A stretch of DNA of 64,000 nt from Iphione sp. A-MEVVRFRX5 (Eukaryota): contig OZ320317.1 in assembly GCA_976226885.1 (NCBI GenBank), positions 36,084,001 through 36,148,000 of the forward strand. The letters run 5' to 3'. Of this stretch, positions 35,601-46,439 are shown piece by piece (position 1 is the first letter of the stretch; each line of letters opens with the position of its first letter). A model generated the notes under the pieces. That model searched no databases. It worked only from the letters and a program-made list of their open reading frames with translations, and was not told where the DNA came from. Position numbers and translations under genes: made by a program.

Positions 35601-36439
35601 TACGATGTACATATGAACAGTTTAGGCGAGGATGAGAACGTAGGGAGGGGTTCGCGCGAGTGGGAACTGAAGGGGGCAAGCCCATCATTTTCGCTGCTCC
35701 CAGTATGGCCGATCTATGCCACCCACACGGCCTCCGGACTGCCACCGGCCTCTGCTCTATGAGGCATGACAGATCGCTCAACTATGATCTTCTTCGAAAC
35801 CCACTGCAATCCTTCTCACAACAGTGTTCTATTTGTGTGGTTCTTATTGATTGATGTCTAAATTGTTAATAACTGGTAGCAAAACCTCCCAGACGCTTTC
35901 ACTGTTCGTAGTTATGAGATGAAAAAGAGCAGGCTTATAGCAATACATGTTTAGCAGCTATGCTGCACGATCTTTTAAGTGGTACGTCATCATGTAATGG
36001 TATTTTGCTTCACAAATGATATATTTTATTTCCAGTGAGATGCATCCCCAAGGCGTAGGGATGCAAACACGAAGCACAAACGGCCTCAGGTCAATGACCT
36101 CAACGACAACGACCTGGGTGGCCACCTGGCGTTCAAATAAATAACAAACAGTACTAGGGGTCCACCTGGTGATAGACGCATGATCGAAACTACGTCAGTA
36201 TCACCTCGCTATTATCTGGGTTTTTTTTTTTTTCAAGGAAATTAACTATAATGACGATGAATACTCTCCTTCTTCTTCTTCTTCTTCTTCATAAATACCC
36301 CCCCCCCAAGTTCTCTCATCCAAATGTCAGGTAAACGGAAACATAACGAGAGGATTGTAAACTACGCTAAACGGTAAACGTCCCCAATTAAATATTTACG
36401 CCCAAACCTGCCAGTTGCAAAATACACGTACATGTATAT

Positions 36440-36623
36440 TGTAGCGGAGGTACTCCGCAGTTACTAAGGTTCCGCAATTATCTAGTGCTCCGCCACTTAT
36501 GGCTACATGTATATAAGGAGGGTGTGCGGAGAAGTCAGTTCAGTTCTCGTTTTGACGTTGAATAAACAACACCTCTTCTACAAAGACGCCTTTATTGAAA
36601 TATGTTGAGGTCGGGTCGTAACA
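36440..36623 (+). repeat. 5' LTR (184 bp)
   Basis: TGTAGCGG...CGTAACA, identical by eye to 45293-45476. TATATAAGGAG at 36510-36520, AATAAA at 36561-36566. Confidence 0.98.
36444..36531. promoter_or_regulatory. GCGGAG site cluster in LTR U3/TATA region (predicted targets of the element's zinc fingers)
   Basis: GCGGAG at 36444 and 36526, CTCCGC at 36453 and 36488, variant TTCCGC at 36470. The first two form the palindrome GCGGAG-GTA-CTCCGC. Confidence 0.7.
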
Positions 36624-37906
36624 TTGGTGGCAGCGGTGGGATTGTGCCTTTCTCCGAGGCGGAGAATGAGACGTCCCCGCCGGCGGAGTCGGCGCTGGGT
36701 GCGGAGTCCTCCTCGGCGGCGGAACTCGCTGAAGTGGCGGAGACGCCGCTGGATGCGGAGAACGCGAGTGAGTTCCTAGTGGAGGTTCGAGGAGGGGCTA
36801 GGACCGTGCGGCCGAAGGAGGAGACGGAGGCTACCCCGGTCTCACGGAGGAGGGCACTCTCACCCCTTGACGGTGCTGGCGAAGGGATCGTGGTTGGGCG
36901 GTCCGCGACAGCACCACGACCCGGAACGGTAGAGACAGAGGTGAATAGGTTGAGGCGAGAACTCGAAGACCCTGGAAGCGACGAGGACTCGTCTGATGGG
37001 AGGGACTCCTCGAGCGATGAGGAATTGGTGGAAGCCAACCCTACAGAAGACCAGGCAGTACGTGGGTTGATGGACGAGCTGCGGAGGGTGATGGCTCCCG
37101 CCGAGAGGTCACGGCGATCAAGCATCAAGGCCGACACGTTCGATGGCACCACCTCACTACCAGATTTCCTTCACCATTACGAACTGGTTGCGGCGGCAAA
37201 TCGTTGGAATGATCGTGAGAAGGCCTTACAGTTGGGGGTATCCCTGCGGAAGGCGGCGCGGACGGCTTTGAGGAATGCCCAGGTCGACATGGATGAAGAG
37301 GGCGCGTATCAGAAGATTGTCAAGACCTTACAGGACCGCTTCCAGCCAGCCGACCAGACAGACGCTTATATGCAACAACTGAAGTATAGGCGCCAAGGAA
37401 AGAGTGAGAAGTTGGCAGACTTGGCCGATGATGTGGAACGCTTGGTGCGGCTCGCCTATCCAGAAGCAGCAGGCCAATGGAAAGACCGGATGTGCAGGGA
37501 ATATTTCCTGGGGGCGCTCGCCAATGAGAAGGAGAGGAAGTGGGTCACTCAAGCCCGAGTCACCACATTCAGGACCGCACTCTCGGAGGCCCAACTCGCA
37601 GAGTCGTATTACGATAGTAAGAAGGAGCGGAGCCCTCGGAGAGTTCACGCCATCGAAGCCCCTGGGGTTGCCCCCGCGGAAGGAGGTAAGGAGGCAACGT
37701 CTGGTTCCTGGCGACGCATCGAGGAACTGTTGCAACAACTTTTAAAGAAGCAGGAGGAAGTCATCGTCCCCAGGCGACAGAAGAAGAAAGGATGCTTCCT
37801 GTGCGATGACCCGGGACATTTCAAGCGGGACTGTCCGAAGCTGAAGGATGCTACTACCAGTCAAGCAAAGTCGGGAAACGGGGGACCGGCCGCTCCCAAT
37901 CAGTAG
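36602..37906 (+). CDS. gag: Gag (434 aa) with C-terminal CCHC zinc knuckle
   Basis: Capsid-like segment FDGTTSLPDFLHHYELVAAANRW... and CFLCDDPGHFKRDC at 37793-37834. The ATG at 36602 is the first ATG after the predicted TSS and has A at -3. Confidence 0.9.
   Translation: MLRSGRNIGGSGGIVPFSEAENETSPPAESALGAESSSAAELAEVAETPLDAENASEFLVEVRGGARTVRPKEETEATPVSRRRALSPLDGAGEGIVVGRSATAPRPGTVETEVNRLRRELEDPGSDEDSSDGRDSSSDEELVEANPTEDQAVRGLMDELRRVMAPAERSRRSSIKADTFDGTTSLPDFLHHYELVAAANRWNDREKALQLGVSLRKAARTALRNAQVDMDEEGAYQKIVKTLQDRFQPADQTDAYMQQLKYRRQGKSEKLADLADDVERLVRLAYPEAAGQWKDRMCREYFLGALANEKERKWVTQARVTTFRTALSEAQLAESYYDSKKERSPRRVHAIEAPGVAPAEGGKEATSGSWRRIEELLQQLLKKQEEVIVPRRQKKKGCFLCDDPGHFKRDCPKLKDATTSQAKSGNGGPAAPNQ
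36625..36643 (+). other. Primer-binding site complementary to tRNA-Leu 3' end
   Basis: TGGTGGCAGCGGTGGGATT, 1 nt after the LTR; complement of the recalled eukaryotic tRNA-Leu(AAG/UAG) end ...AATCCCACCGCTGCCA-CCA. Confidence 0.85.
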
Positions 37907-37919
37907 AGCGAGCGGCCGG
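37873..37919 (+). other. Programmed -1 ribosomal frameshift signal (gag-pol)
   Basis: G GGA AAC heptamer in the gag frame (37873-37879), 6-nt spacer, perfect 10-bp stem CCGGCCGCTC (37886-37895)/GAGCGGCCGG (37910-37919). The pol frame is -1 and open from 37810. Confidence 0.9.
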
Positions 37920-40900
37920 AGTTTGTGAGAGCCCCTCGACCCTAGAAGAGCACCTGCGTAGGGTGACGGTGGATGACGAAGGTTGGCGGCAAGTCCGGCT
38001 AGATGGCGACCCGGACAGGACGGGACGAGGAATCATCGTGAGCGGCTACGTTCAAGGTCAGAGGATTCAGTGGTTGGTGGACACTGGGGCCTCCCTCACC
38101 TTGCTGAGCGCGCGGAAGGCGGCCACCCTTCGCTTGGGACACCCAGAAGACGTGCCCGGACGAGTGTTGTGTGCGGATGGGAACCCCCTACAGGTGGAGG
38201 GACGCGTGGAGGTAGAGGTGACCCTCGACGGGGTCCGGTTACCGGTAACTGTGTTAGTGGCGAACATCGACTGTGACGGCATACTAGGCATGGACACTCT
38301 CACCCGTTGGAGAGCAGTGTTGGACACCTCTGCCTCTGTCCTACATCTGACGTTGCCCGCGGAAGCGCCTGCGAGAAGTCGATTGGTGAGGTTAGCCGAG
38401 GATACAGCAGTGGAAGGCGGTAGCATAAGTTATGCAGAGGTGACCCTGGAGCCGGGCACGGGTACCGCCGAGGAGGTCCTGGTGGAAGGAGCGGCGGGGT
38501 TTGAGGCCAAGACAGGAGTCCGCGTAGCCAGGTCGCTGTGGGAGGCTGACACCAGTACCGGCTGGGTGCCCGTGTGCAACCCAGGGTGTTCCCGCGTGCG
38601 TTTACGGAAAGGGATGGTGGTCGGACAGACCTCGGCCGTGAAGCTGAGTGCCCCGGAAGATGGACCGACAGAAGAGGTCAAGAGCTGCAAGCCTAGCCCA
38701 GCGGTCGAGCTGTTGAAGTCCAGTCTCCCCGACGAATTGTCGACCTCCGAGAAAGAAGCGATAGGGCAGATGCTGGAACGTTGTCGAGAAGTTTTCCAAG
38801 AAGAAGGAGGGTCGTTGGGACGTACCGACGTGATCGCGCATGGGATAGATACTCAAGGGCACTCCCCTCTTCGCCAGAGAGTGCGACGCCTTCCCCCCCA
38901 GAAGAGGAAGATCGTACAGCAGGAGATTGAGAGTATGATGAAGAAAGGCGTCATCGAACCCTCCACTAGTCCGTGGGCCTCTCCGGTGGTGTTGGTACGG
39001 AAGAAGGACGGCGGGTGGAGGTTTTGTATAGACTACCGCGGCCTGAACCGGGTTACCAAGAAGGACGCGTATCCTTTACCACGAATCGATGACACCTTAG
39101 ACGCTCTACAAGGGGCTACGTACTTCTCAGCCATCGACCTAGCTGCGGGGTACTGGCAAGTGAAGTTAAAGCCCGAAGACCGTGAGAAGACCGCCGTGTG
39201 TACCACCTCCGGATTATTCCAGTTTACCGTGATGCCATTCGGACTGTGTAACGCTCCATCGACGTTCGAGCGACTCATGGAGGCAGTACTTCGGGGGTTG
39301 GTAGGACAAACCTGCCTCGTCTACCTAGATGATGTTATTATCATAGGGAAGGATGTGAACGAGATGGTTGATCACCTTGAAGAAGTGTTCCTTCGGTTAT
39401 CCGCTGCGGGCCTGAAAGTGAAACCCAGTAAATGTCAGCTATTCCGAAGAGAGGTCGCTTACTTGGGACATCTAGTCTCAGCCGAAGGAGTTGGGCCCGA
39501 TCCGGGGAAGATTGCAGCAGTTCAGAAGTGGCCGCGGCCACGGTGTCTAACGGAACTAAGGAGCTTCCTGGGGTTATGCTCCTATTACCGGAGCTTTGTA
39601 AAAGGGTTTGCTATGTTGACTGCTCCCCTGAATGCCCTTCTACAGAAAGAGGCGGAATTCCGTTGGAATAGCGATTGCGAGACGGCGTTTGAAGACTTGA
39701 AGAATCGTCTCACGTCCGCTCCCATTTTAGGATACCCACGGCCCGACGGAAACCTTCATCTGGATACAGACGCCTCGGCCGGGGGCATCGGAGCGGTCCT
39801 TGCCCAGGATCAGGACGGCGTAGAACGGGTGCTCGCTTACGCAAGCCGGACCCTGACGAAGGCTGAGCGCAATTATTGTGTCACACGGAAAGAGCTATTA
39901 GCGGTGGTGTTCGGCTTGAGGAAATTCCGACCGTATTTGGGAGACCAACATGTGACTATTCGCACTGACCACAATTCCCTACGCTGGCTCTGTCAATTCA
40001 AGGAGCCGGAGGGGCAGCTGGCCCGTTGGCTCGAAGAAGTGTATACGTACAACCTCACCATCATTCACCGCCCTGGGCGGAACCATGGTAACGCCGACGG
40101 GTTGTCACGGGTGGAGTGTACACAGTGCGGACGCCGGGAAGTGACCGAGGAGACAGCCCGAGTTGGTTCAGTGCAGTTGGCCGAAGAAACTGGTAGCGCC
40201 CTTCAAGAAGCCCAATACGCCGAGCGGATGTCTAAGGCCCTGTTGCTTGCCCTCCGCGGAGGGGTTGAAGATGAAGAGCTGCCTGCCCCCTGCGATGCAG
40301 AAGAGCGCTGGCTTCTTGGAGAGAGAGCCAGGCTGGTAGAAGATGGTGGCGTCCTCCGTCGGAGATGGGAGAGAGAAGACGGGAGCGTGCTGTTGCAGAC
40401 CTATGTGCCTAGGGCTCTCCGACATCCCATCTGGCAACACGTACACGCTGGGCCGATGGGGGGACATCTGGGGATCAAGAAGACCGAAGGAGCTCTACGC
40501 CTGAGGTACTGTTGGCCCCATTTGCGGAAAGACGTAGAGTGGTGGGGACAGAGTTGTGTGACTTGCCAGCAGGTTAAGGCCCCATCGATCAAACACAGAG
40601 GACCACTACTAGCCCGCCCGGTGGCTGGCCCTTGGGAGTTCGTTGCCGTTGACGTCTGTGGTCCGTTCCCGCAAACGCGTCGAGGGCATCGGTTCATTAT
40701 AGTGGTCGCGGACCATTTTACCAAGTGGGTGGAAGCCTTCCCCACTCCTGACGGCACTGCCGAGACTACAGCCCGAGTACTTCTACAGGAAGTAGTGTGT
40801 CGGTTCGGCCCCCCACGAGCGGTGCATTCAGACCAAGGACGTAATTTCGAGTCAGCAGTGTTTCGGGAACTTCTGCAACTCCTCGGTATTGAGAAGTCCC

Positions 40901-43900
40901 GCACCACACCTTACCACCCACAAAGCGACGGGGTGGTGGAGCGGTTTAACCGAACCCTAGCGAAGATGTTGGCCGCTGTAGTAGATGAAGAACAATCTGA
41001 CTGGGATGAACGAGTTCCTTTCGTGGTTGCAGCATACCGGGCCACCCCCCATTCCAGTACGGGCTTCACCCCGAACTGGTTGATGCTCCACAGAGAGACG
41101 ACACTTCCGGCTGAATTGATGTTCGGTGCACCACCCGGGGAGGTGCCCCCCAGGGGGGAGTTAGTGAGCAGGACACAAGGACGCATCGTCGAGGCCTATC
41201 AGTTGGCGAGGGAGCGTCTCCAGAGATCAGCAGTACGTCAGAAGGATTACTACGACCGGCACGTGCGAAGTCAGACGTTTCAACCAGGGGCATTGGTGTG
41301 GTTGCTCAACCCCACGAAGAAAGTTGGACGTTCCCCGAAGTTAGAGAAGACCTGGCAAGGGCCCTGGATTGTCAGTGAGCGGCTATCAGACGTTGTTTAT
41401 CGTGTGAAGAACGGATCTAAGCAACGAGTAGTACATACAGATTTACTGAAACCTGCATCGCAGCCCCCGAGTGACAACGTCATAGGGGTGGTGAATATGC
41501 TGCGGACACGTAGCCCAGGGGCGCATGTCCCCGAGGGGAGACCACGAGTTGATGTGCAAGGAAGGACGAGAGAGGTCACGACGGGCCTTGTGGGGGGGCA
41601 GGGGGGGCTGAAGGACCCCCGGCCCTCCCCTCGTCTGCCCCTGCCGAGGGTGCATCACCAAACAGGGGGAGGACCGAAACCCCCACCTCGCTGGTATCGT
41701 CGGGACTCTGTGGTCCAAAAGAGAGAAGAACCTCCTCGGGACGCGAGCCGCTGGCTAGAAGGGGAGCGACCTCCCCCACCTTCTCGACGTGGCCCATGTG
41801 GGCCTGTGCGGGAGAATGCGGACCTCCCCACGGAAAGTAGATGGAAACCTCGGACACGCCTGGAAGGAGCATGGGTGAAACTCCTTGCCCCACTCCTTCA
41901 GAGAACTTACCTGGCAGGCATATTATCCAGACAAGGAGGCCGGAGAGGAGGAGATTACAGGTTCGGACGGTTGATGTGGAAGGTAAAGGGATTCAGAAGA
42001 AAGATGGATCAACGGTTAGGAAGCCTCACCACTACCGCGATCTTCGCTGAATTAGGCAGGTTGAACGAGGAACGCTACAGGAGGTCTCAAGCGTGGAAAG
42101 AAACTAATCTTCGTTCTCCGCACCATCGGCGGAGAAGGGCGGAGAATCGAGACGTGGCGGAGATCGAAGCCCAGGCGGCGAACGACACAAGAGCGGAGAA
42201 ACGTCGGCGACGGAGTTCTACCCCAGTGCGAGGAAATAAGAACAGGCGGGGAGAAGAAAACGATTGGAATCGACACGAAACCTTAGCCCATTTTCGGAGA
42301 AAACAACGAGGCGGAGGGTTGCATGATGACGACCCGCCGCTACGGCGGAGAAGCGAAAGCTCGCGTGGCACGAGATTCGAATGGACCAATCAGCGGCCGG
42401 CGGAGACAGGCCAAGGGCTATATAAGGAGAGCGTCGTGCGGGGTACCCTCCCCATTCGACAATTCGATTTCGTGGAATACAGAACTCGTGGCGGAGACAA
42501 AATCGACAGCGGTTCCTGTTTTGGTGCGGAGGGCGACAATTGGCGTGTCCCGACGGCTGCGCAGAAACGATCTTCGCTGGGGACCTTGCGAGGCGGAGAA
42601 TACGAGGGCGGCGGAGACTGGTGCGGAGAATACAGCGACGGCGGAGAATCGGGGACGTGCGGAGTAACAGGCGCCACTATGCCAGACTGCCAGTTTTGCT
42701 GCAGCGACTGTGGCTTGAAGTTCAAGCGCAAGGCCAATCTCATCAGGCACTTCAAGGTCCATGAGAAGAGTGGGTTCGGGCGACGATGCCCCGTGCCTCG
42801 TTGTCAAGGCAAGATATTCAAGAGAAGAGATGACTTCCGTCGTCATCTGCGCCGAGTACATCGAGACTACCCCCCACACTACCTGGCCCTGGGGCAGGAT
42901 GTAGATGTGGAGTTTTTGACGTATCGCCTGGTTGACGGGTCACTACAGGGGATTACTACAGAGGTGCCACCGCAGAGAGCCAGGGAGTTCGCCCGACAGC
43001 AGGAGGACGAGGCCTTCGAACGTGAGAAGGAGGCAGCCATGATGAGGGGAGAGGAGCCGCCGAGAAAGAAGAAGCGCTCGAAAATAGAGGACGATTCTGA
43101 AGACGAGAGTGGCGAGGATGAGGATTCAGAGCCGGACGATGATGACGGGGGAACATCCGCCTCTGGGAGTGGAGCGACGGCGACCCGACCTGCCGGTGAG
43201 AAGAGGTCAAGGGCGTCGTCTAGATCGGAGCCCCAGCCCTCTACTTCATCCTGTGCTGACCCTCAACCGTCCACATCAAGAGGCACAGGAGGGAAGAAGC
43301 GCCCCCCTTCGGCAGCCAGGGGGCGACCCGCAACACCTTCCCCTGGCTCATCCCCGGCGAGCAGCTGCACGCTGCACCCCCCCACAGTGACCAGCACCAG
43401 CGGAGTGGGGACAACACCGTGCAGCCTACCTGCCCCGCCCCGAGTGGCGCGGGCTACCACTACGGCCAGCACCCCCCAGACAGGCGGCATGCATCTCCAG
43501 CTGTGGGGGTTGGACTCTGAGAGCGTGCCCTCCACGCCTGCACTCACCCCTCAACTAGTCGAAGCTGCAAGGGTGAGCGAGTGGCGGCATCATCGTTCGG
43601 CAGAGGACGAAGGAAGAAGACGGCCAGGGTCTGGCACCCCAGCCTCTAGCACGGTCTCTCCGATCACCCCTGGCCGTGGGTGGGATTTATCAGATCCCCG
43701 TCGTCCTCGAGGGAGAGGCCTGGGAAAGAAGACGACGTCGCCAGCCCAGTCTCCCCCCTGGACCAGAAGCCGGGGACCCCCGACCCCTTCCACCCCTATG
43801 TCGGGGGTGTCTTCTAGTTACGCGGGTGCAGCAGAAGAACTGGACCGTCGACTCGAAGAGATGCGCTCCCCTTCGGGACTTTCGCCAGTGCCAGAGAGCG

Positions 43901-44898
43901 AAGAAGAGCGGACTTCCCCCAAGCGAACGGTGTTTTCGGTGACCGAGTCGGAGAGGGATGAGGGAGAAGTTCGCCCAGGAGCACCCAGCCGGGTGGGAGG
44001 CAAGACGTCTGGCGTGCCCGCGGCGGAAGCCCCACCTACACCGGGCGATCCCGACGAGACGGTCCCGAGGGACGGCTGTGGGGCTGCTGCAGGGTCCGCT
44101 AGGGCCCTCCCCCAGTCCCCGACGGTCGACTCCGAGGGCCACCGCGAGCCGCCATCTGAAGAGGCCCCCCCGAGCGGACGCAATTCGCCAGCCGGCAGCG
44201 ATGGAGTCCCACCTGGGGAGGAGGAGGGTGTCCCTCTTCCGCCTGATCAGCCATCCAGGCAACCCCGAGGGACTCCAAGAGAGGCTGGCCCGGACGCTGA
44301 CCCGGGCATCGTGGCGGCCCCGGAGGTTGGAGGCGACGGCAACTTGACAGCGGCTCACGGGTCCTCCCCCGAGAGGGAGGATCAACCTGCTGGGCCACTT
44401 GGCGTAGGGCCCGCCGATGCGGGTCCCACCGACGAGGGCGGCACCGAGGGCGACGAACAAGACATCGCGGATGAGGGCGACCAAGGAGACGCAGGGCCGG
44501 CTGACCAAGGGGCAGGCCCTCAGGCTCCCGCACGACCGCGGTGGCCTACCTGGTCAGTGCAAGAGGAGGACGAGCTCTACACCTGGGCGTATGGGCGAGC
44601 CCTCACAACGACTGAGCGACCCCCGGACGGCTGGCAGTTCTTGTCGGCTGTCACTCGAGTGAGGATGCAGCTCCAGGGGGCGAGGCCCCAAGTGCAGTTT
44701 GATCATCGAGCTGACTTCCGGCAAGTGGAAGAGACCCCCGGACAATCCATCTGGACGTGGTTTAGACTACGGTCCGGCCGGACCCAGGGTCCCCGGATGC
44801 GAGTATCCTATCAGGACGTTAGTGTCTCGGCACGAGACCTAAGGACCTCCACATTGGAGTGTGATGAACTGTTTTGCCAGGAAGAGGTTGGCCAGTAG
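37876..44898 (+). CDS. pol: Pol polyprotein (protease, RT, RNase H, integrase) with about 1140-aa in-frame C-terminal extension; entered by -1 frameshift
   Basis: PR DTG at 38080; RT YLDD at 39322-39333; RH DTDASAGGIG at 39763; IN H-H-C-C at 40444-40566 and D(40651)-D(40831)-35-E(40939); GPY/F-like WQGPW; typical IN end near 41460; no stop until 44896-44898. Confidence 0.93.
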   Translation, partial: KRGTGRSQSVERAAGVCESPSTLEEHLRRVTVDDEGWRQVRLDGDPDRTGRGIIVSGYVQGQRIQWLVDTGASLTLLSARKAATLRLGHPEDVPGRVLCADGNPLQVEGRVEVEVTLDGVRLPVTVLVANIDCDGILGMDTLTRWRAVLDTSASVLHLTLPAEAPARSRLVRLAEDTAVEGGSISYAEVTLEPGTGTAEEVLVEGAAGFEAKTGVRVARSLWEADTSTGWVPVCNPGCSRVRLRKGMVVGQTSAVKLSAPEDGPTEEVKSCKPSPAVELLKSSLPDELSTSEKEAIGQMLERCREVFQEEGGSLGRTDVIAHGIDTQGHSPLRQRVRRLPPQKRKIVQQEIESMMKKGVIEPSTSPWASPVVLVRKKDGGWRFCIDYRGLNRVTKKDAYPLPRIDDTLDALQGATYFSAIDLAAGYWQVKLKPEDREKTAVCTTSGLFQFTVMPFGLCNAPSTFERLMEAVLRGLVGQTCLVYLDDVIIIGKDVNEMVDHLEEVFLRLSAAGLKVKPSKCQLFRREVAYLGHLVSAEGVGPDPGKIAAVQKWPRPRCLTELRSFLGLCSYYRSFVKGFAMLTAPLNALLQKEAEFRWNSDCETAFEDLKNRLTSAPILGYPRPDGNLHLDTDASAGGIGAVLAQDQDGVERVLAYASRTLTKAERNYCVTRKELLAVVFGLRKFRPYLGDQHVTIRTDHNSLRWLCQFKEPEGQLARWLEEVYTYNLTIIHRPGRNHGNADGLSRVECTQCGRREVTEETARVGSVQLAEETGSALQEAQYAERMSKALLLALRGGVEDEELPAPCDAEERWLLGERARLVEDGGVLRRRWEREDGSVLLQTYVPRALRHPIWQHVHAGPMGGHLGIKKTEGALRLRYCWPHLRKDVEWWGQSCVTCQQVKAPSIKHRGPLLARPVAGPWEFVAVDVCGPFPQTRRGHRFIIVVADHFTKWVEAFPTPDGTAETTARVLLQEVVCRFGPPRAVHSDQGRNFESAVFRELLQLLGIEKSRTTPYHPQSDGVVERFNRTLAKMLAAVVDEEQSDWDERVPFVVAAYRATPHSSTGFTPNWLMLHRETTLPAELMFGAPPGEVPPRGELVSRTQGRIVEAYQLARERLQRSAVRQKDYYDRHVRSQTFQPGALVWLLNPTKKVGRSPKLEKTWQGPWIVSERLSDVVYRVKNGSKQRVVHTDLLKPASQPPSDNVIGVVNMLRTRSPGAHVPEGRPRVDVQGRTREVTTGLVGGQGGLKDPRPSPRLPLPRVHHQTGGGPKPPPRWYRRDSVVQKREEPPRDASRWLEGERPPPPSRRGPCGPVRENADLPTESRWKPRTRLEGAWVKLLAPLLQRTYLAGILSRQGGRRGGDYRFGRLMWKVKGFRRKMDQRLGSLTTTAIFAELGRLNEERYRRSQAWKETNLRSPHHRRRRAENRDVAEIEAQAANDTRAEKRRRRSSTPVRGNKNRRGEENDWNRHETLAHFRRKQRGGGLHDDDPPLRRRSESSRGTRFEWTNQRPAETGQGLYKESVVRGTLPIRQFDFVEYRTRGGDKIDSGSCFGAEGDNWRVPTAAQKRSSLGTLRGGEYEGGGDWCGEYSDGGESGTCGVTGATMPDCQFCCSDCGLKFKRKANLIRHFKVHEKSGFGRRCPVPRCQGKIFKRRDDFRRHLRRVHRDYPPHYLALGQDVDVEFLTYRLVDGSLQGITTEVPPQRAREFARQQEDEAFEREKEAAMMRGEEPPRKKKRSKIEDDSEDESGEDEDSEPDDDDGGTSASGSGATATRPAGEKRSRASSRSEPQPSTSSCADPQPSTSRGTGGKKRPPSAARGRPATPSPGSSPASSCTLHPPTVTSTSGVGTTPCSLPAPPRVARATTTASTPQTGGMHLQLWGLDSESVPSTPALTPQLVEAARVSEWRHHRSAEDEGRRRPGSGTPASSTVSPITPGRGWDLSDPRRPRGRGLGKKTTSPAQSPPWTRSRGPPTPSTPMSGVSSSYAGAAEELDRRLEEMRSPSGLSPVPESEEERTSPKRTVFSVTESERDEGEVRPGAPSRVGGKTSGVPAAEAPPTPGDPDETVPRDGCGAAAGSARALPQSPTVDSEGHREPPSEEAPPSGRNSPAGSDGVPPGEEEGVPLPPDQPSRQPRGTPREAGPDADPGIVAAPEVGGDGNLTAAHGSSPEREDQPAGPLGVGPADAGPTDEGGTEGDEQDIADEGDQGDAGPADQGAGPQAPARPRWPTWSVQEEDELYTWAYGRALTTTERPPDGWQFLSAVTRVRMQLQGARPQVQFDHRADFRQVEETPGQSIWTWFRLRSGRTQGPRMRVSYQDVSVSARDLRTSTLECDELFCQEEVGQ
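42129..42664 (+). promoter_or_regulatory. Putative internal promoter with CCAAT box, TATA box and 14 GCGGAG sites
   Basis: CCAATCAG at 42386-42393; TATATAAGGAG at 42419-42429 (same 11-mer as the LTR TATA). GCGGAG at 42129, 42139, 42157, 42193, 42311, 42345, 42400, 42491, 42526, 42593, 42611, 42623, 42641, 42659. Confidence 0.75.
42679..44898 (+). CDS. Putative element-encoded C2H2 zinc-finger transcription factor (739 aa), in frame with pol
   Basis: ATG in GCCACTATG context, the first ATG after the internal TATA. ZF1 CSDC-x3-F-x5-L-x2-H-x3-H (42700-42762); ZF2 CPVPRC-x4-F-x5-F-x2-H-x4-H (42787-42861). NLS-like PPRKKKRSK (43057-43083), acidic tract, long P/S/T/E-rich region, aromatic-rich C-terminal ~120 aa. 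Confidence 0.8.
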   Translation: MPDCQFCCSDCGLKFKRKANLIRHFKVHEKSGFGRRCPVPRCQGKIFKRRDDFRRHLRRVHRDYPPHYLALGQDVDVEFLTYRLVDGSLQGITTEVPPQRAREFARQQEDEAFEREKEAAMMRGEEPPRKKKRSKIEDDSEDESGEDEDSEPDDDDGGTSASGSGATATRPAGEKRSRASSRSEPQPSTSSCADPQPSTSRGTGGKKRPPSAARGRPATPSPGSSPASSCTLHPPTVTSTSGVGTTPCSLPAPPRVARATTTASTPQTGGMHLQLWGLDSESVPSTPALTPQLVEAARVSEWRHHRSAEDEGRRRPGSGTPASSTVSPITPGRGWDLSDPRRPRGRGLGKKTTSPAQSPPWTRSRGPPTPSTPMSGVSSSYAGAAEELDRRLEEMRSPSGLSPVPESEEERTSPKRTVFSVTESERDEGEVRPGAPSRVGGKTSGVPAAEAPPTPGDPDETVPRDGCGAAAGSARALPQSPTVDSEGHREPPSEEAPPSGRNSPAGSDGVPPGEEEGVPLPPDQPSRQPRGTPREAGPDADPGIVAAPEVGGDGNLTAAHGSSPEREDQPAGPLGVGPADAGPTDEGGTEGDEQDIADEGDQGDAGPADQGAGPQAPARPRWPTWSVQEEDELYTWAYGRALTTTERPPDGWQFLSAVTRVRMQLQGARPQVQFDHRADFRQVEETPGQSIWTWFRLRSGRTQGPRMRVSYQDVSVSARDLRTSTLECDELFCQEEVGQ

Positions 44899-45280
44899 CT
44901 TCAGTAAGACTCTTCAAACCGTAAGTTACCTCTAAGATATTGTTTTTAAGAGTGGCTAGTATAGGCCATTGGTCTAGAATTAAACGAGGTCTCGTGCCAT
45001 ATACTTTAGAACTTAGGACAAGAAGGACTTGCATACCGTCGCTTTAGCTATGTGATATTCACTTCAGATTTGAGTAGAATAAGTAACTTAGAGAATAGCA
45101 GTCAAGTACATGACAGAATTGGTTAGCGTGTTACTGCTGTCCAGTTGGACAATTATTTTCTTGCATGGGCCTGCCCAGTCCAAGGTGGGAACCCTCCTTT
45201 TCCCTCCAGGATTATTCTGTGTATGTTAAATCATTACCTACATGTAAGATCGGACTTACTCAGGGACTGAGTTAGATTTT

Positions 45281-45292
45281 AGGAGGGAGTAG
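45281..45292 (+). other. Polypurine tract
   Basis: AGGAGGGAGTAG immediately before the 3' LTR. Confidence 0.9.
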
Positions 45293-45476
45293 TGTAGCGG
45301 AGGTACTCCGCAGTTACTAAGGTTCCGCAATTATCTAGTGCTCCGCCACTTATGGCTACATGTATATAAGGAGGGTGTGCGGAGAAGTCAGTTCAGTTCT
45401 CGTTTTGACGTTGAATAAACAACACCTCTTCTACAAAGACGCCTTTATTGAAATATGTTGAGGTCGGGTCGTAACA
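45293..45476 (+). repeat. 3' LTR (184 bp)
   Basis: Identical by eye to the 5' LTR; AATAAA at 45414-45419. Confidence 0.98.
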
Positions 45477-46439
45477 ATATGAATGTATCCTAACGATCAA
45501 AGCTGAACTAAATAGAGGTGTATTACAGTGTCCTATCTTGCTTGTGAATTTAGTTATTTTCTTTATTCTGGTACCATTTCTTACGTTTCAAAAGGGAAAC
45601 AGGAGGGTACATGCCCACCTCAAACCGTGCGTGTCAGGGACAAACCCCAGTTATCACCCCCAGTCCATGGGTCCATGGGTTCCATGGGTACAAAGAACAG
45701 CTTCAGGAGCCTGGCGTTCACTGCCTACGAAAGGTTTTTGACAGATGCATGAGATGTATTCAGGCATATTTAGAGCATTTCATAGATACGGCTTCGCTGA
45801 AATAAGTGTCCCAGACCAAAGGAATATTCTTGTTGAAAGTATCATTCCCAGTTCATACCACGATAGTGAAATCCCTTGTTCGCCACTTACAGAACAAGAA
45901 CGTTTCATATAGATGCACATAATACGTAGTCTGCTAGAACTTATACCAACAATATGAGTTGTACACAAGGCAATTACATTCGCGCTATTTACTGAGAGTT
46001 AAGTACGCACACCATTAAAAATCTTCCTACAACTCTCTTGCACCGCCTGACAAATTTAGGAATCGATGAGGGGAACCGGGGAGATCCACCTGTATCGATG
46101 TCATTAGTTCATCTTCATTAAGTTGTGGCAGATAGATGAAACCATTGGTCTCACTAGCGATGCGACAACTCAAGCTTCCTACCAAAGCTGTCCATGACTT
46201 TTTTTTCAGGGACAATACCACTAATTCGTGTGTGTCTGGTGTCATCTTCATACAGGAGTTTCATAGGAACAGACTGTCCCCATTTGATAACCCAACCTAC
46301 AACCAGCGGCAGACACAGACGGCCTGACGGAAGGTAAAGTACCATCTACACGGACATGTACTGCATCTTGGAGAGGAAGAGTCAGCCTCGCCACGAGTTG
46401 TTTATACCATGGGCCACGAAGGAGATAAGCAGTACTTAC

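What the first reader, a model, noticed from the sequence alone, without database searches (positions are those of the whole stretch)
42679..42861. Retrotransposon-encoded tandem C2H2 fingers whose recognition code spells the element's own repeated motif (self-regulating circuit)
ZF1 helix positions -1..6 are R-K-A-N-L-I-R (R-1, N3, R6 predict GAG); ZF2 is R-R-D-D-F-R-R (R-1, D3, R6 predict GCG, with D2 favouring G at the start of the next triplet). These match the established Zif268-derived modules RSDNLVR (GAG) and RSDDLVR (GCG). Fingers bind antiparallel, giving 5'-GCG GAG-3', exactly the hexamer clustered in both LTRs, at the Gag start and around the internal promoter. With an NLS, an acidic tract and a long disordered region, the ORF looks like a dedicated transcription factor for the element's two promoters. 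This would be convergent with foamy-virus Tas, which is made from an internal promoter and acts on both it and the LTR. I know of no such circuit described for a Ty3/Gypsy element, but cannot search the literature. Activator versus repressor is unresolved, and the site contains a CpG, so binding could sense or block methylation.
Basis: partly seen in the sequence, partly recalled or inferred. Interest (0 to 1): 0.97.

Follow-up and report, generated by a model that had tools for sequence, protein, structure and literature searches.

The report
Retrotransposon encoding its own promoter-binding zinc fingers
A young Gypsy-type jumping gene carries, after its integrase, a conserved internal promoter and a two-zinc-finger protein whose predicted DNA target (GCGGAG) is the motif packed into both of its promoters, and a distant relative with different finger residues carries the correspondingly different motif, so the element probably regulates itself.

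Summary
The window holds an intact Ty3/Gypsy element (36440-45476, 184-bp LTRs, TSD ATAT). A C2H2 finger pair lies at 42700-42861.

GCGGAG is the top-ranked hexamer in the LTR (4 seen, 0.04 expected). It is also top in the 620 nt upstream of the fingers (15 seen, 1.0 expected).

New findings:
- The finger protein (ORF3) defines a superfamily of at least 1,100 copies and at least 8 diverged families in this genome. Finger 2's helix (RRDDFRR) is nearly invariant (variants only in a minority of individual copies).
- All families keep an internal promoter of the form CCAATCAG, GCGGAG, TATA, GCGG(A/G)G, Inr, 276-395 nt upstream.
- All keep a Met in Kozak context, preceded by an ATG-depleted leader (3 ATGs seen, about 24 expected).
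- ORF3 also stays in frame with integrase in every family.
- Motif sites are more conserved than their flanks, occur in all codon phases and on both strands.
- A distant relative (ENA contig L056) has finger 1 residues Q/S/R, the GTA module, and its enriched motif is GCGGTA (20 seen, 3.6 expected). That motif appears in the same LTR and internal positions.

One family (KRANLDR) does not fit the code. No RNA or binding data exist. Other first-stage readers of this scan noted the same idea on other copies in this genome; none of those notes is marked as followed up.

The parts
36436..36439 (.). Target-site duplication ATAT (5' copy)
   Evidence: Same ATAT at 45477-45480. All 5 complete copies examined (own copy, L021-L024) are flanked by ATAT on both sides, and a sixth copy (L025), seen only at its 3' end, also has ATAT there.
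36440..36623 (+). 5' LTR (184 bp, TG...CA). GCGGAG sites at 36444(+), 36453(-), 36488(-), 36526(+). TATATAAG at 36510. Inr TCAGTT at 36535-36545. AATAAA at 36561.
   Evidence: Direct repeat with 45293-45476 at 99% identity. GCGGAG is rank 1, 4 seen against 0.04 expected.
36625..36643 (+). Primer-binding site (TGGTGGCAGCGGTGGGATT)
   Evidence: Read directly from the sequence, 1 nt after the LTR end. Assigning it to a tRNA-Leu 3' end rests on memory only.
36602..37906 (+). gag (434 aa, CCHC knuckle). Its ATG lies in U5. The GCGGAG array at 36659-36760 has mostly 18-nt spacing.
   Evidence: ORF and Pfam zf-CCHC. 27 synonymous against 4 non-synonymous fixed differences versus subfamily B. Sites listed.
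37963..41390 (+). pol: protease, RT, RNase H, integrase (ends with the GPY/F module), in the -1 frame relative to gag
   Evidence: Pfam RVT_1, RT_RNaseH, Integrase_H2C2, rve, Asp_protease. 65 synonymous against 21 non-synonymous.
41391..42678 (+). Open-frame linker between integrase and ORF3. It contains the internal promoter and the ORF3 leader.
   Evidence: No stops in the pol frame against 2-14 in the other frames. 41301-42100 shows a codon-position signal (3, 7, 15). 42101-42678 shows none (4 synonymous, 15 non-synonymous).
42386..42460 (+). Internal promoter core: CCAAT 42386-42390 (within CCAATCAG 42386-42393), GCGGAG 42400, TATATAAG 42419, GCGGGG 42438, Inr-like CCCCATTCG with A at 42454
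   Evidence: The same layout occurs in 10 other loci from diverged families. The genome-wide pattern gives 1601 hits against 480 for the control.
42116..42664 (+). Cluster of 15 GCGGAG sites (14 on the + strand) flanking the internal promoter and filling the ORF3 leader
   Evidence: All 15 are conserved in subfamily B while 19 fixed differences fall outside them. Sites lie in codon phases 0, 1 and 2 as 5:7:2.
42679..44898 (+). ORF3 (739 aa): finger pair, conserved beta-hairpin plus long helix (to about aa 125), NLS, acidic tract, disordered region with conserved short motifs, constrained C-terminal region
   Evidence: Conserved Met with a purine at -3 in all families, and an ATG-depleted leader. 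Conserved blocks across families. Indels against subfamily B are multiples of 3. ZF 2 synonymous, 0 non-synonymous; middle 28:19; C-terminus 9:1.
42700..42762 (+). Zinc finger 1, helix RKANLIR (R-1, N3, R6; predicted GAG)
   Evidence: Pfam PF00096 E 1.4e-6. N3 and R6 are invariant in alignment A1.
42787..42861 (+). Zinc finger 2, helix RRDDFRR (R-1, D2, D3, R6; predicted GCG)
   Evidence: Helix identical in most copies of all diverged families. R, D, R are retained in the distant relative P0160.
45281..45292 (+). Polypurine tract
   Evidence: Read from the sequence immediately upstream of the 3' LTR.
45293..45476 (+). 3' LTR with the same four GCGGAG sites

Best explanation
The element is a 'complex' Ty3/Gypsy retrotransposon. 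Besides gag and pol it encodes ORF3, a nuclear protein. Its N-terminal two-finger domain binds double-stranded GCGGAG: finger 2 reads GCG and finger 1 reads GAG.

The motif sits in the LTR promoter, both upstream of the TATA box and between TATA and the initiator. It sits at the same positions in a second, internal CCAAT/TATA promoter inside the 3' end of the pol frame. It also forms arrays just downstream of both start sites.

ORF3 is made in two ways. It is the C-terminal part of the Gag-Pol polyprotein, because the frame is kept open. It is also made as a free protein from a subgenomic mRNA that starts at about 42454 and is translated from the first ATG at 42679.

The protein therefore feeds back on both of the element's promoters. 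The acidic tract favours activation, in the manner of foamy-virus Tas, but the sign of the effect is inferred, not shown.

Shown here: the anatomy, its conservation, the selective constraint on sites and fingers, and the co-variation of finger residues with the motif. Inferred: binding, transcription from the internal promoter, and the regulatory outcome.
For: 1. The canonical contact residues give GCG-GAG, matching published modules. That hexamer is rank 1 in the LTR and in the internal region.
2. The same finger architecture occurs 1008 times outside this family against 0 for the reversed-pattern control. Finger 2's helix is nearly invariant across families, finger 1's N3 and R6 are invariant, and every family's motif starts with GCGG.
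3. A distant relative, P0160/L056 (44% identical in Pol, from another sample), has finger 1 Q-1, S2, S3, R6. These are the contact residues of the GTA-specific module QSSSLVR (PMC2632909). Its finger 2 has R, D, R.
4. That relative's enriched hexamer is GCGGTA: 20 seen against 3.6 expected, maximum 10 in simulations. It lies in the gag 5' region with 18-nt spacing, upstream of the fingers, and on both sides of the LTR TATATAAGG in the same layout as here.
5. The internal promoter layout is conserved across families. The leaders hold 3 ATGs against about 24 expected, and a conserved Met in Kozak context follows.
6. Site positions change less than their flanks between subfamilies despite holding a CpG: 0/90 against 19/488 here, 1/84 against 117/512 (p = 5e-8) and four further pairs at p <= 0.05.
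7. Sites occur in all codon phases and on both strands, so double-stranded DNA is the likely target.
8. The modelled finger pair superposes on DNA-bound pairs.
Against: - There are no binding, expression or reporter data. No RNA run was listed.
- The KRANLDR family (L047) carries GCGG(T/G)C, although the code predicts GAG for K/N/R.
- RKANLVR and RKANLLR families carry GCGGGG about as often as GCGGAG despite N at +3. The HPSNFKR family also has CCGGAGT.
- Finger 2 has 13 rather than 12 residues between the second Cys and the first His. The linker is not TGEKP, so canonical docking is assumed.
- Two fingers give only a 6-bp site.
- A site between TATA and Inr could just as well mean repression.
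- The co-variation rests on a single outgroup.
- LTRs of the other families in this genome could not be fetched.
Confidence: 0.6

Rival explanations
1. The fingers do bind the element's motif, but mainly as part of the Pol/integrase polyprotein. They would hold integrase, or the pre-integration complex, on the ends of the element's own DNA, as a transposase's site-specific DNA-binding domain does. They might also help nuclear import. Transcriptional control would be secondary or absent.
For: - The ORF3 frame is continuous with integrase in every family and in L056. There are no stops in the last 500 nt in 9 loci examined (plus this element), against about 1-10 per other frame.
- In both lineages motif copies lie within 30 bp of the U3 terminus of the LTR: positions 5-19 here, 12-32 in L056.
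Against: - Most sites are not at the DNA ends. They lie around an internal CCAAT/TATA promoter and downstream of both start sites.
- The U5 end has no nearby site.
- The conserved Met, its Kozak context and the ATG-free leader point to a free ORF3 protein.
- The NLS and acidic tract fit a transcription factor.
Confidence: 0.15
2. GCGGAG is the site of a host transcription factor or a core-promoter element that these elements exploit. The element's fingers would have another target, such as host genes, chromatin or RNA, and the match to the recognition code would be coincidence.
For: - The motif lies at fixed core-promoter positions next to an NF-Y-type CCAATCAG box and a TATA box.
- Exceptions to the code exist: L047, and the GCGGGG sites.
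- Many C2H2 fingers do not follow the simple code.
Against: - The full 6-bp prediction equals the top-ranked hexamer in two lineages that differ in both finger 1 and the motif: GAG with R/N/R, GTA with Q/S/R.
- The invariant half of the motif pairs with the invariant finger.
- Outside the element the window shows no enrichment: 16 sites in 55 kb.
Confidence: 0.15
3. The motif is a by-product of something else: Ala-Glu peptide repeats in the open frame, or an RNA signal for packaging, export or a hairpin. It would then be unrelated to the fingers.
For: - GCG GAG reads Ala-Glu in the gag N-terminus, and 'SARAEH' repeats occur in two families.
- In this family 14 of 15 internal sites are on the + strand.
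- Inverted pairs such as CTCCGC-N4-GCGGAG could fold in RNA.
- In the HPSNFKR family CCGGAG is mostly in phase as Pro-Glu.
Against: - Sites fall in all three codon phases (5:7:2 here) and on both strands in the families examined (in this family's internal region only one site is on the minus strand). In L056 the gag cluster is on the minus strand and the internal one on the plus strand.
- The LTR U3 sites are non-coding, and those upstream of the start site are not transcribed from that LTR.
- The 42101-42678 region shows no codon-position signal, yet its sites are conserved.
Confidence: 0.05
4. The fingers, fused to integrase, steer integration towards GCGGAG-containing genomic targets, as chromodomains in chromoviruses or the fingers of R2 do.
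For: The fusion to integrase is in frame.
Against: Five complete copies are flanked by ATAT on both sides (a sixth, seen only at its 3' end, also has ATAT there) in AT-rich DNA, with no GCGGAG in about 2,300 nt of flanks.
Confidence: 0.03

Closest known systems
Foamy-virus Tas (Bel1) with its internal promoter
   Same: A retroelement encodes a DNA-binding regulator downstream of pol. It would be expressed from an internal promoter lying inside a coding region, with target sites in both that promoter and the LTR. This is a two-promoter feedback layout.
   Different: - There is no sequence relation: ORF3 found only generic zinc-finger proteins among 1.84 billion representatives.
- The DNA-binding domain here is a C2H2 pair.
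- The host element is a Ty3/Gypsy retrotransposon without env.
- ORF3 is also in frame with Pol.
- Activation is not shown.
Tor elements of Oikopleura dioica (Penv internal promoter; PMC4402516)
   Same: [quoted passage not shown]
   Different: The third gene there is env, not a DNA-binding protein. No self-encoded factor or shared motif between the two promoters is described.
ZFP57 two-finger recognition of the CpG-containing hexamer TGCCGC (PDB 4GZN/4M9V)
   Same: Two classical fingers suffice to read a 6-bp CpG-containing site. The model here superposes on it (rmsd 3.3-3.6 A, TM by target 0.66, 32-33% identity).
   Different: ZFP57 is a host KRAB repressor that needs methylated DNA. Methylation dependence is unknown here.
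Integrase C-terminal targeting modules (chromovirus chromodomain) and the N-terminal C2H2 fingers of R2 elements (from general knowledge)
   Same: A nucleic-acid or chromatin reader fused to the retroelement's polyprotein.
   Different: Those domains pick the genomic target. Here insertion flanks lack the motif and the sites lie inside the element itself.

Membership tests
Ty3/Gypsy (Metaviridae) LTR retrotransposon | LTRs ending TG...CA, target-site duplication, PBS after the 5' LTR, polypurine tract before the 3' LTR | tested here: met
   184-bp LTRs at 99% identity, TSD ATAT, PBS at 36625-36643, PPT at 45281-45292.
Ty3/Gypsy (Metaviridae) LTR retrotransposon | gag with CCHC knuckle; pol domain order PR-RT-RNase H-IN | tested here: met
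   Pfam hits in that order. Best Pol matches are annotated retrotransposon polyproteins.
Classical C2H2 (Zif268/Krueppel-type) DNA-binding finger pair | C-x2-4-C-x12-H-x3-5-H with conserved hydrophobic residues and a beta-beta-alpha fold | tested here: met
   Finger 1 passes Pfam (28.8 bits against a 25.2 cut-off). The model has hairpin plus helix for both fingers, pLDDT 82.9. It superposes on DNA-bound pairs.
Classical C2H2 (Zif268/Krueppel-type) DNA-binding finger pair | Canonical 12-residue spacing and a TGEKP-type 7-residue linker, which underlie contiguous triplet reading | tested here: not met
   Finger 2 has 13 residues between Cys and His. The linker is EKSGFGRR, 8 residues with no TGEKP. 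Contiguous docking is therefore assumed, not established.
Classical C2H2 (Zif268/Krueppel-type) DNA-binding finger pair | Sequence-specific binding to double-stranded DNA through helix positions -1, 2, 3 and 6 | not testable with these tools
   Only indirect support: the code prediction equals the enriched motif in two lineages.
Foamy-virus Tas-type autoregulatory circuit (works like, not a member) | Internal Pol II promoter inside a coding region upstream of the regulator gene | tested here: inconclusive
   Conserved CCAAT/TATA/Inr layout, ATG-free leader and conserved Met. No transcript evidence was available.
Foamy-virus Tas-type autoregulatory circuit (works like, not a member) | Regulator's binding sites present in both the internal promoter and the LTR | tested here: met
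   This holds for the predicted site: 4 sites per LTR and 15 around the internal promoter. The same is seen for GCGGTA in L056.
Foamy-virus Tas-type autoregulatory circuit (works like, not a member) | Homology to Tas/Bel1 | tested here: not met
   No match other than generic fingers. Pfam finds only zf-C2H2.
Integrase-fused targeting domain (chromovirus type) | Domain fused in frame to the integrase C-terminus | tested here: met
   The frame is open from the GPY/F module to ORF3 in all families.
Integrase-fused targeting domain (chromovirus type) | Insertions lie at or near the feature the domain reads | tested here: not met
   No GCGGAG in about 2,300 nt of flanks of 6 copies. The target is ATAT.

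The most novel reading that the evidence does not exclude
Retrotransposon families carry private, co-evolving pairs of transcription factor and binding site. The element-encoded two-finger protein and the motif arrays in its LTR and internal promoters change together: GCGGAG with R/N/R, GCGGTA with Q/S/R. The factor is also delivered inside the particle as a Pol fusion, so a new insertion would arrive with its own activator. This would be a natural, evolvable zinc-finger code operating in a mobile element. It would be the retrotransposon counterpart of the transactivators of complex retroviruses.
Probability: 0.3. Interest if true: 0.92.

Novelty: new variant of a known kind. Interest (0 to 1): 0.85.

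Why it matters
LTR retrotransposons are usually thought to depend on host factors for transcription. Self-encoded transactivators are regarded as a hallmark of complex retroviruses.

If ORF3 binds its own motif, this abundant superfamily would show that a Ty3/Gypsy element can run its own promoter circuit. The superfamily has at least 1,100 copies, several families of them very young.

It would also provide a natural series of two-finger domains with matched sites, useful for testing the zinc-finger recognition code. The exceptions (KRANLDR, and the GCGGGG sites) would be informative there.

It raises the question of what a transcription factor fused to integrase does inside the particle. The CpG in every site makes the system a candidate for interplay with DNA methylation.

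All of this can be tested directly with a 125-residue domain and two short promoters.

Tried and rejected
- RNA evidence: the look-up of sequencing runs listed no RNA run. Expression is untested.
- Homologues of ORF3: a word-based search on the finger region of the 2311-aa ORF found nothing.
- An exhaustive HMMER search of ORF3 found only generic multi-finger proteins.
- A search with the finger region of P0160 found only P0160 itself.
- A JGI metagenome scan found no relative.
- The Atlas feature search of the C-terminal 140 aa gave no usable hit.
- A single-sequence fold of the ORF3 C-terminus was unreliable (pLDDT 47.6) and was not searched further.
- Homodimer test of ORF3 1-147 (prompted by palindromic site pairs and a long helix): no verdict, score 0.00. 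This is not evidence either way.
I did not try to get those letters another way. The co-variation test inside this genome is therefore limited to the 1.5 kb upstream of the fingers.
- Peptide-repeat explanation: rejected, because sites occur in mixed codon phases and on both strands.
- Integration-targeting explanation: rejected.
- Spliced ORF3 mRNA from the LTR: no polypyrimidine tract or acceptor context before 42679 (read). Unlikely, but not excluded.
- Literature searches for a Gypsy element with post-integrase C2H2 fingers or a self-encoded factor found none.
Full report
**What is at the coordinates**

The window holds an intact Ty3/Gypsy element at 36440-45476.
- It has 184-bp LTRs at 99% identity, a TSD of ATAT, a PBS at 36625-36643 and a polypurine tract at 45281-45292.
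- gag (36602-37906, with a CCHC knuckle) is followed in the -1 frame by pol, with protease, RT, RNase H and integrase.
- The pol frame does not stop after the integrase GPY/F module (about 41390). It runs on to 44898, giving 2311 aa.
- At 42679 an ATG precedes two C2H2 fingers. Finger 1 lies at 42700-42762 with helix RKANLIR. Finger 2 lies at 42787-42861 with helix RRDDFRR.
- Pfam recognises finger 1 (E 1.4e-6).
- Finger 2 has one extra residue in its hairpin, and the linker is not TGEKP. The pair still aligns to Aart, PRDM9, ZNF568 and Zif268.
- An AlphaFold model built on an 11-sequence alignment (pLDDT 82.9, pTM 0.68) superposes on DNA-bound CTCF, ZFP57 and Tramtrack pairs at 2.4-3.6 A.

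**The motif**

- GCGGAG occurs 49 times in the window against 13.8 expected, and no shuffle reaches 49.
- Of these, 33 are in the element: 4 per LTR, 5 in the first 160 nt of gag (mostly at 18-nt spacing) and 15 in 42116-42664.
- In an unbiased ranking of hexamers seen at least three times it comes first in the LTR (4 against 0.04) and in the 620 nt before the fingers (15 against 1.0).
Published tables pair GAG with RSDNLVR and GCG with RSDDLVR (PMC5260015).

**The element is one of a superfamily**

- The genome is 1.18 Gb. It holds at least 138 near-identical copies and a 96.8%-identical subfamily B.
- A pattern of the eight Cys/His codons with this exact spacing, made to exclude this family, gives 1008 hits against 0 for the reversed control.
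- The 30 loci returned belong to about eight families whose ORF3 proteins are 30-47% identical to this one.
- Finger 2's helix RRDDFRR is the same in nearly all copies (variants such as RRDDFHG, RRDDFCR, RRDDFWH and HRDDFRR occur in some copies). In finger 1, N at +3 and R at +6 are invariant, while -1 is R, H or K.
- ORF3 also shares further blocks across families: LGQxVD, PVP, an E-rich long helix, QLWGLD, LTPQL and TPGRGW.

**ORF3 is a selected gene**

- Fixed differences between this copy and subfamily B are 2 synonymous to 0 non-synonymous in the fingers, 28:19 in the middle and 9:1 at the C-terminus.
- Indels in ORF3 are multiples of three, whereas those in the 3' UTR are not.

**A conserved internal promoter and start codon**

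- In every family the same arrangement lies 276-395 nt before the first Cys. It reads CCAATCAG, about 10 nt, GCGGAG, about 13 nt, TATA(T/A)A, about 10 nt, GCGG(A/G)G, then an initiator-like CCATTCG or CAGTT.
- Here it lies at 42386-42460.
- The LTR promoter has the same TATA, motif, Inr core.
- The genome-wide pattern CCAATCAG-N15-30-TATAWA gives 1601 hits against 480 for the control. Most listed hits carry GCGGAG or its CpG-decay forms.
- Between the predicted start site and a conserved Met (purine at -3 in all families) the leaders contain 3 ATGs in eight families, where about 24 are expected.
- This argues for a scanning ribosome on an internally initiated mRNA.
- There is a precedent for an internal promoter in a Gypsy-like element: Tor elements of Oikopleura (PMC4402516).

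**ORF3 is also part of Pol**

- In all families the finger frame has no stop in the 500 nt upstream, while the other frames have about 1-10 each.
- In L034 that frame is the integrase GPY/F frame.
- Here 41301-42100 still shows a codon-position signal, whereas 42101-42678 shows none (4 synonymous, 15 non-synonymous) yet stays open.
- So the promoter and leader double as an unconstrained but open Pol linker, and a Pol-ORF3 fusion must be translated from genomic RNA.

**The sites are selected as DNA**

- All 15 internal sites are unchanged in subfamily B, while 19 fixed differences fall around them.
- In other families site positions differ less than their flanks:
  - 1/84 against 117/512 (p = 5e-8);
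  - 2/84 against 49/524;
  - 3/72 against 72/527;
  - 12/60 against 156/503;
  - 11/48 against 178/481;
  - one pair is not significant.
- Sites lie in all three codon phases and on both strands. This rules out a simple Ala-Glu repeat and argues against an RNA signal.

**Co-variation**

- Within this genome every family's motif begins with GCGG, the part assigned to the invariant finger 2 plus R6 of finger 1.
- The last two bases are AG in the R/N/R families, AG and GG in RKANL(V/L)R families, and TC or GC in the KRANLDR family.
- The KRANLDR case and the GCGGGG sites do not follow the simple code.
- The search with the full polyprotein found one protein of the same length and design, P0160 (2317 aa, ENA sample ERZ25072730, 44% identical in Pol).
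- Its finger pair aligns to the family profile (hhalign probability 93.9%).
- Its finger 2 keeps R-1, D3 and R6. Its finger 1 reads Q-1, S2, S3, R6, the contact residues of the GTA-specific module QSSSLVR (PMC2632909).
- I noted a G-N-A expectation from these residues before fetching the DNA.
- Its contig (L056) contains no excess of GCGGAG near the fingers. It has GCGGTA 20 times against 3.6 expected (maximum 10 in 200 simulations).
- Those sites lie as three in the gag 5' region at 18-nt spacing, nine within 620 nt upstream of the fingers, and two before plus one just after the LTR TATATAAGG, followed by CAGTTCTC. This is the same layout as the LTR here.

**What it is not**

- Six copies have ATAT targets in AT-rich DNA, with no GCGGAG in about 2,300 nt of flanks. 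The fingers therefore do not steer insertion to such sites.
- ORF3 has no relative beyond generic fingers in 1.84 billion representatives.

**Limits**

- No RNA run was listed, so the internal transcript is inferred.
- Binding is inferred from the code and from co-variation with a single outgroup.
- Activator versus repressor is open. The acidic tract suggests activation, while the site between TATA and Inr could block initiation.
- LTRs of the other families could not be fetched.
- A homodimer test gave no verdict.

**Verdict**

The best reading is a self-encoded, motif-specific DNA-binding regulator, expressed both from a conserved internal promoter and as a Pol fusion, acting on the element's two promoters (confidence about 0.6). 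It works like the foamy-virus Tas circuit but is unrelated to it. Literature searches found no described Gypsy counterpart. Other first-stage notes in this scan flag the same idea on other copies of this genome. None of those notes is marked as followed up, and they are not independent evidence.

Noticed in passing
window 36436-36439 and 45477-45480; L021-L025: All five complete copies examined (this copy and four subfamily-B copies) are flanked by ATAT on both sides, and a sixth copy seen only at its 3' end has ATAT there too. This points to a strict palindromic target site for this integrase.
   Followed up: partly
G000:C11:50243373-50281833 (L004, L010-L013): Five copies of this family lie within about 40 kb in mixed orientation. 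Two are spaced 8,853 bp apart, which is the LTR-to-LTR distance, so they probably share an LTR in tandem. Others have overlapping predicted extents, suggesting nested or rearranged copies.
   Followed up: no
window 36625-36643: The PBS TGGTGGCAGCGGTGGGATT looks complementary to the 3' end of a tRNA-Leu. This is from memory and was not checked against this genome's tRNAs.
   Followed up: no
window 36602-36760: The first ATG of the LTR transcript lies in U5. gag is therefore read through the PBS, and its N-terminus carries the GCGGAG array as Ala-Glu codons. Subfamily B has a sixth site at 36719.
   Followed up: partly
genome-wide hits (e.g. G000:C1:7644172, 22388908, 59002057): Some copies show GTGGAG, GCAGAG or GCACGGAG at the site between CCAAT and TATA. 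This is the pattern expected from CpG deamination and hints that these sites are methylated in the germ line once copies are silenced.
   Followed up: no
L036, L037, L042: about 350-720 nt upstream of the fingers: Repeats of about 110 bp, each with a CTCCGC and GCGG(G/A)G site, lie just upstream of the internal CCAAT box in the RKANL(V/L)R families. The arrangement is enhancer-like.
   Followed up: no
window 43220-43260; P0160 about residue 2117: A short motif (E/S)PQPSTS(G/S) recurs in the disordered part of ORF3 in several families and in the distant relative P0160. It may be a conserved docking or modification site.
   Followed up: no
L033, L034, L044: last 300 nt before the fingers: In two families the sites come as inverted pairs, CTCCGC-N4-GCGGAG, inside 'YSARAEH' peptide repeats. 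The LTR here has the opposite arrangement, GCGGAG-GTA-CTCCGC. This suggests paired or dimeric binding, but the homodimer prediction gave no verdict.
   Followed up: partly
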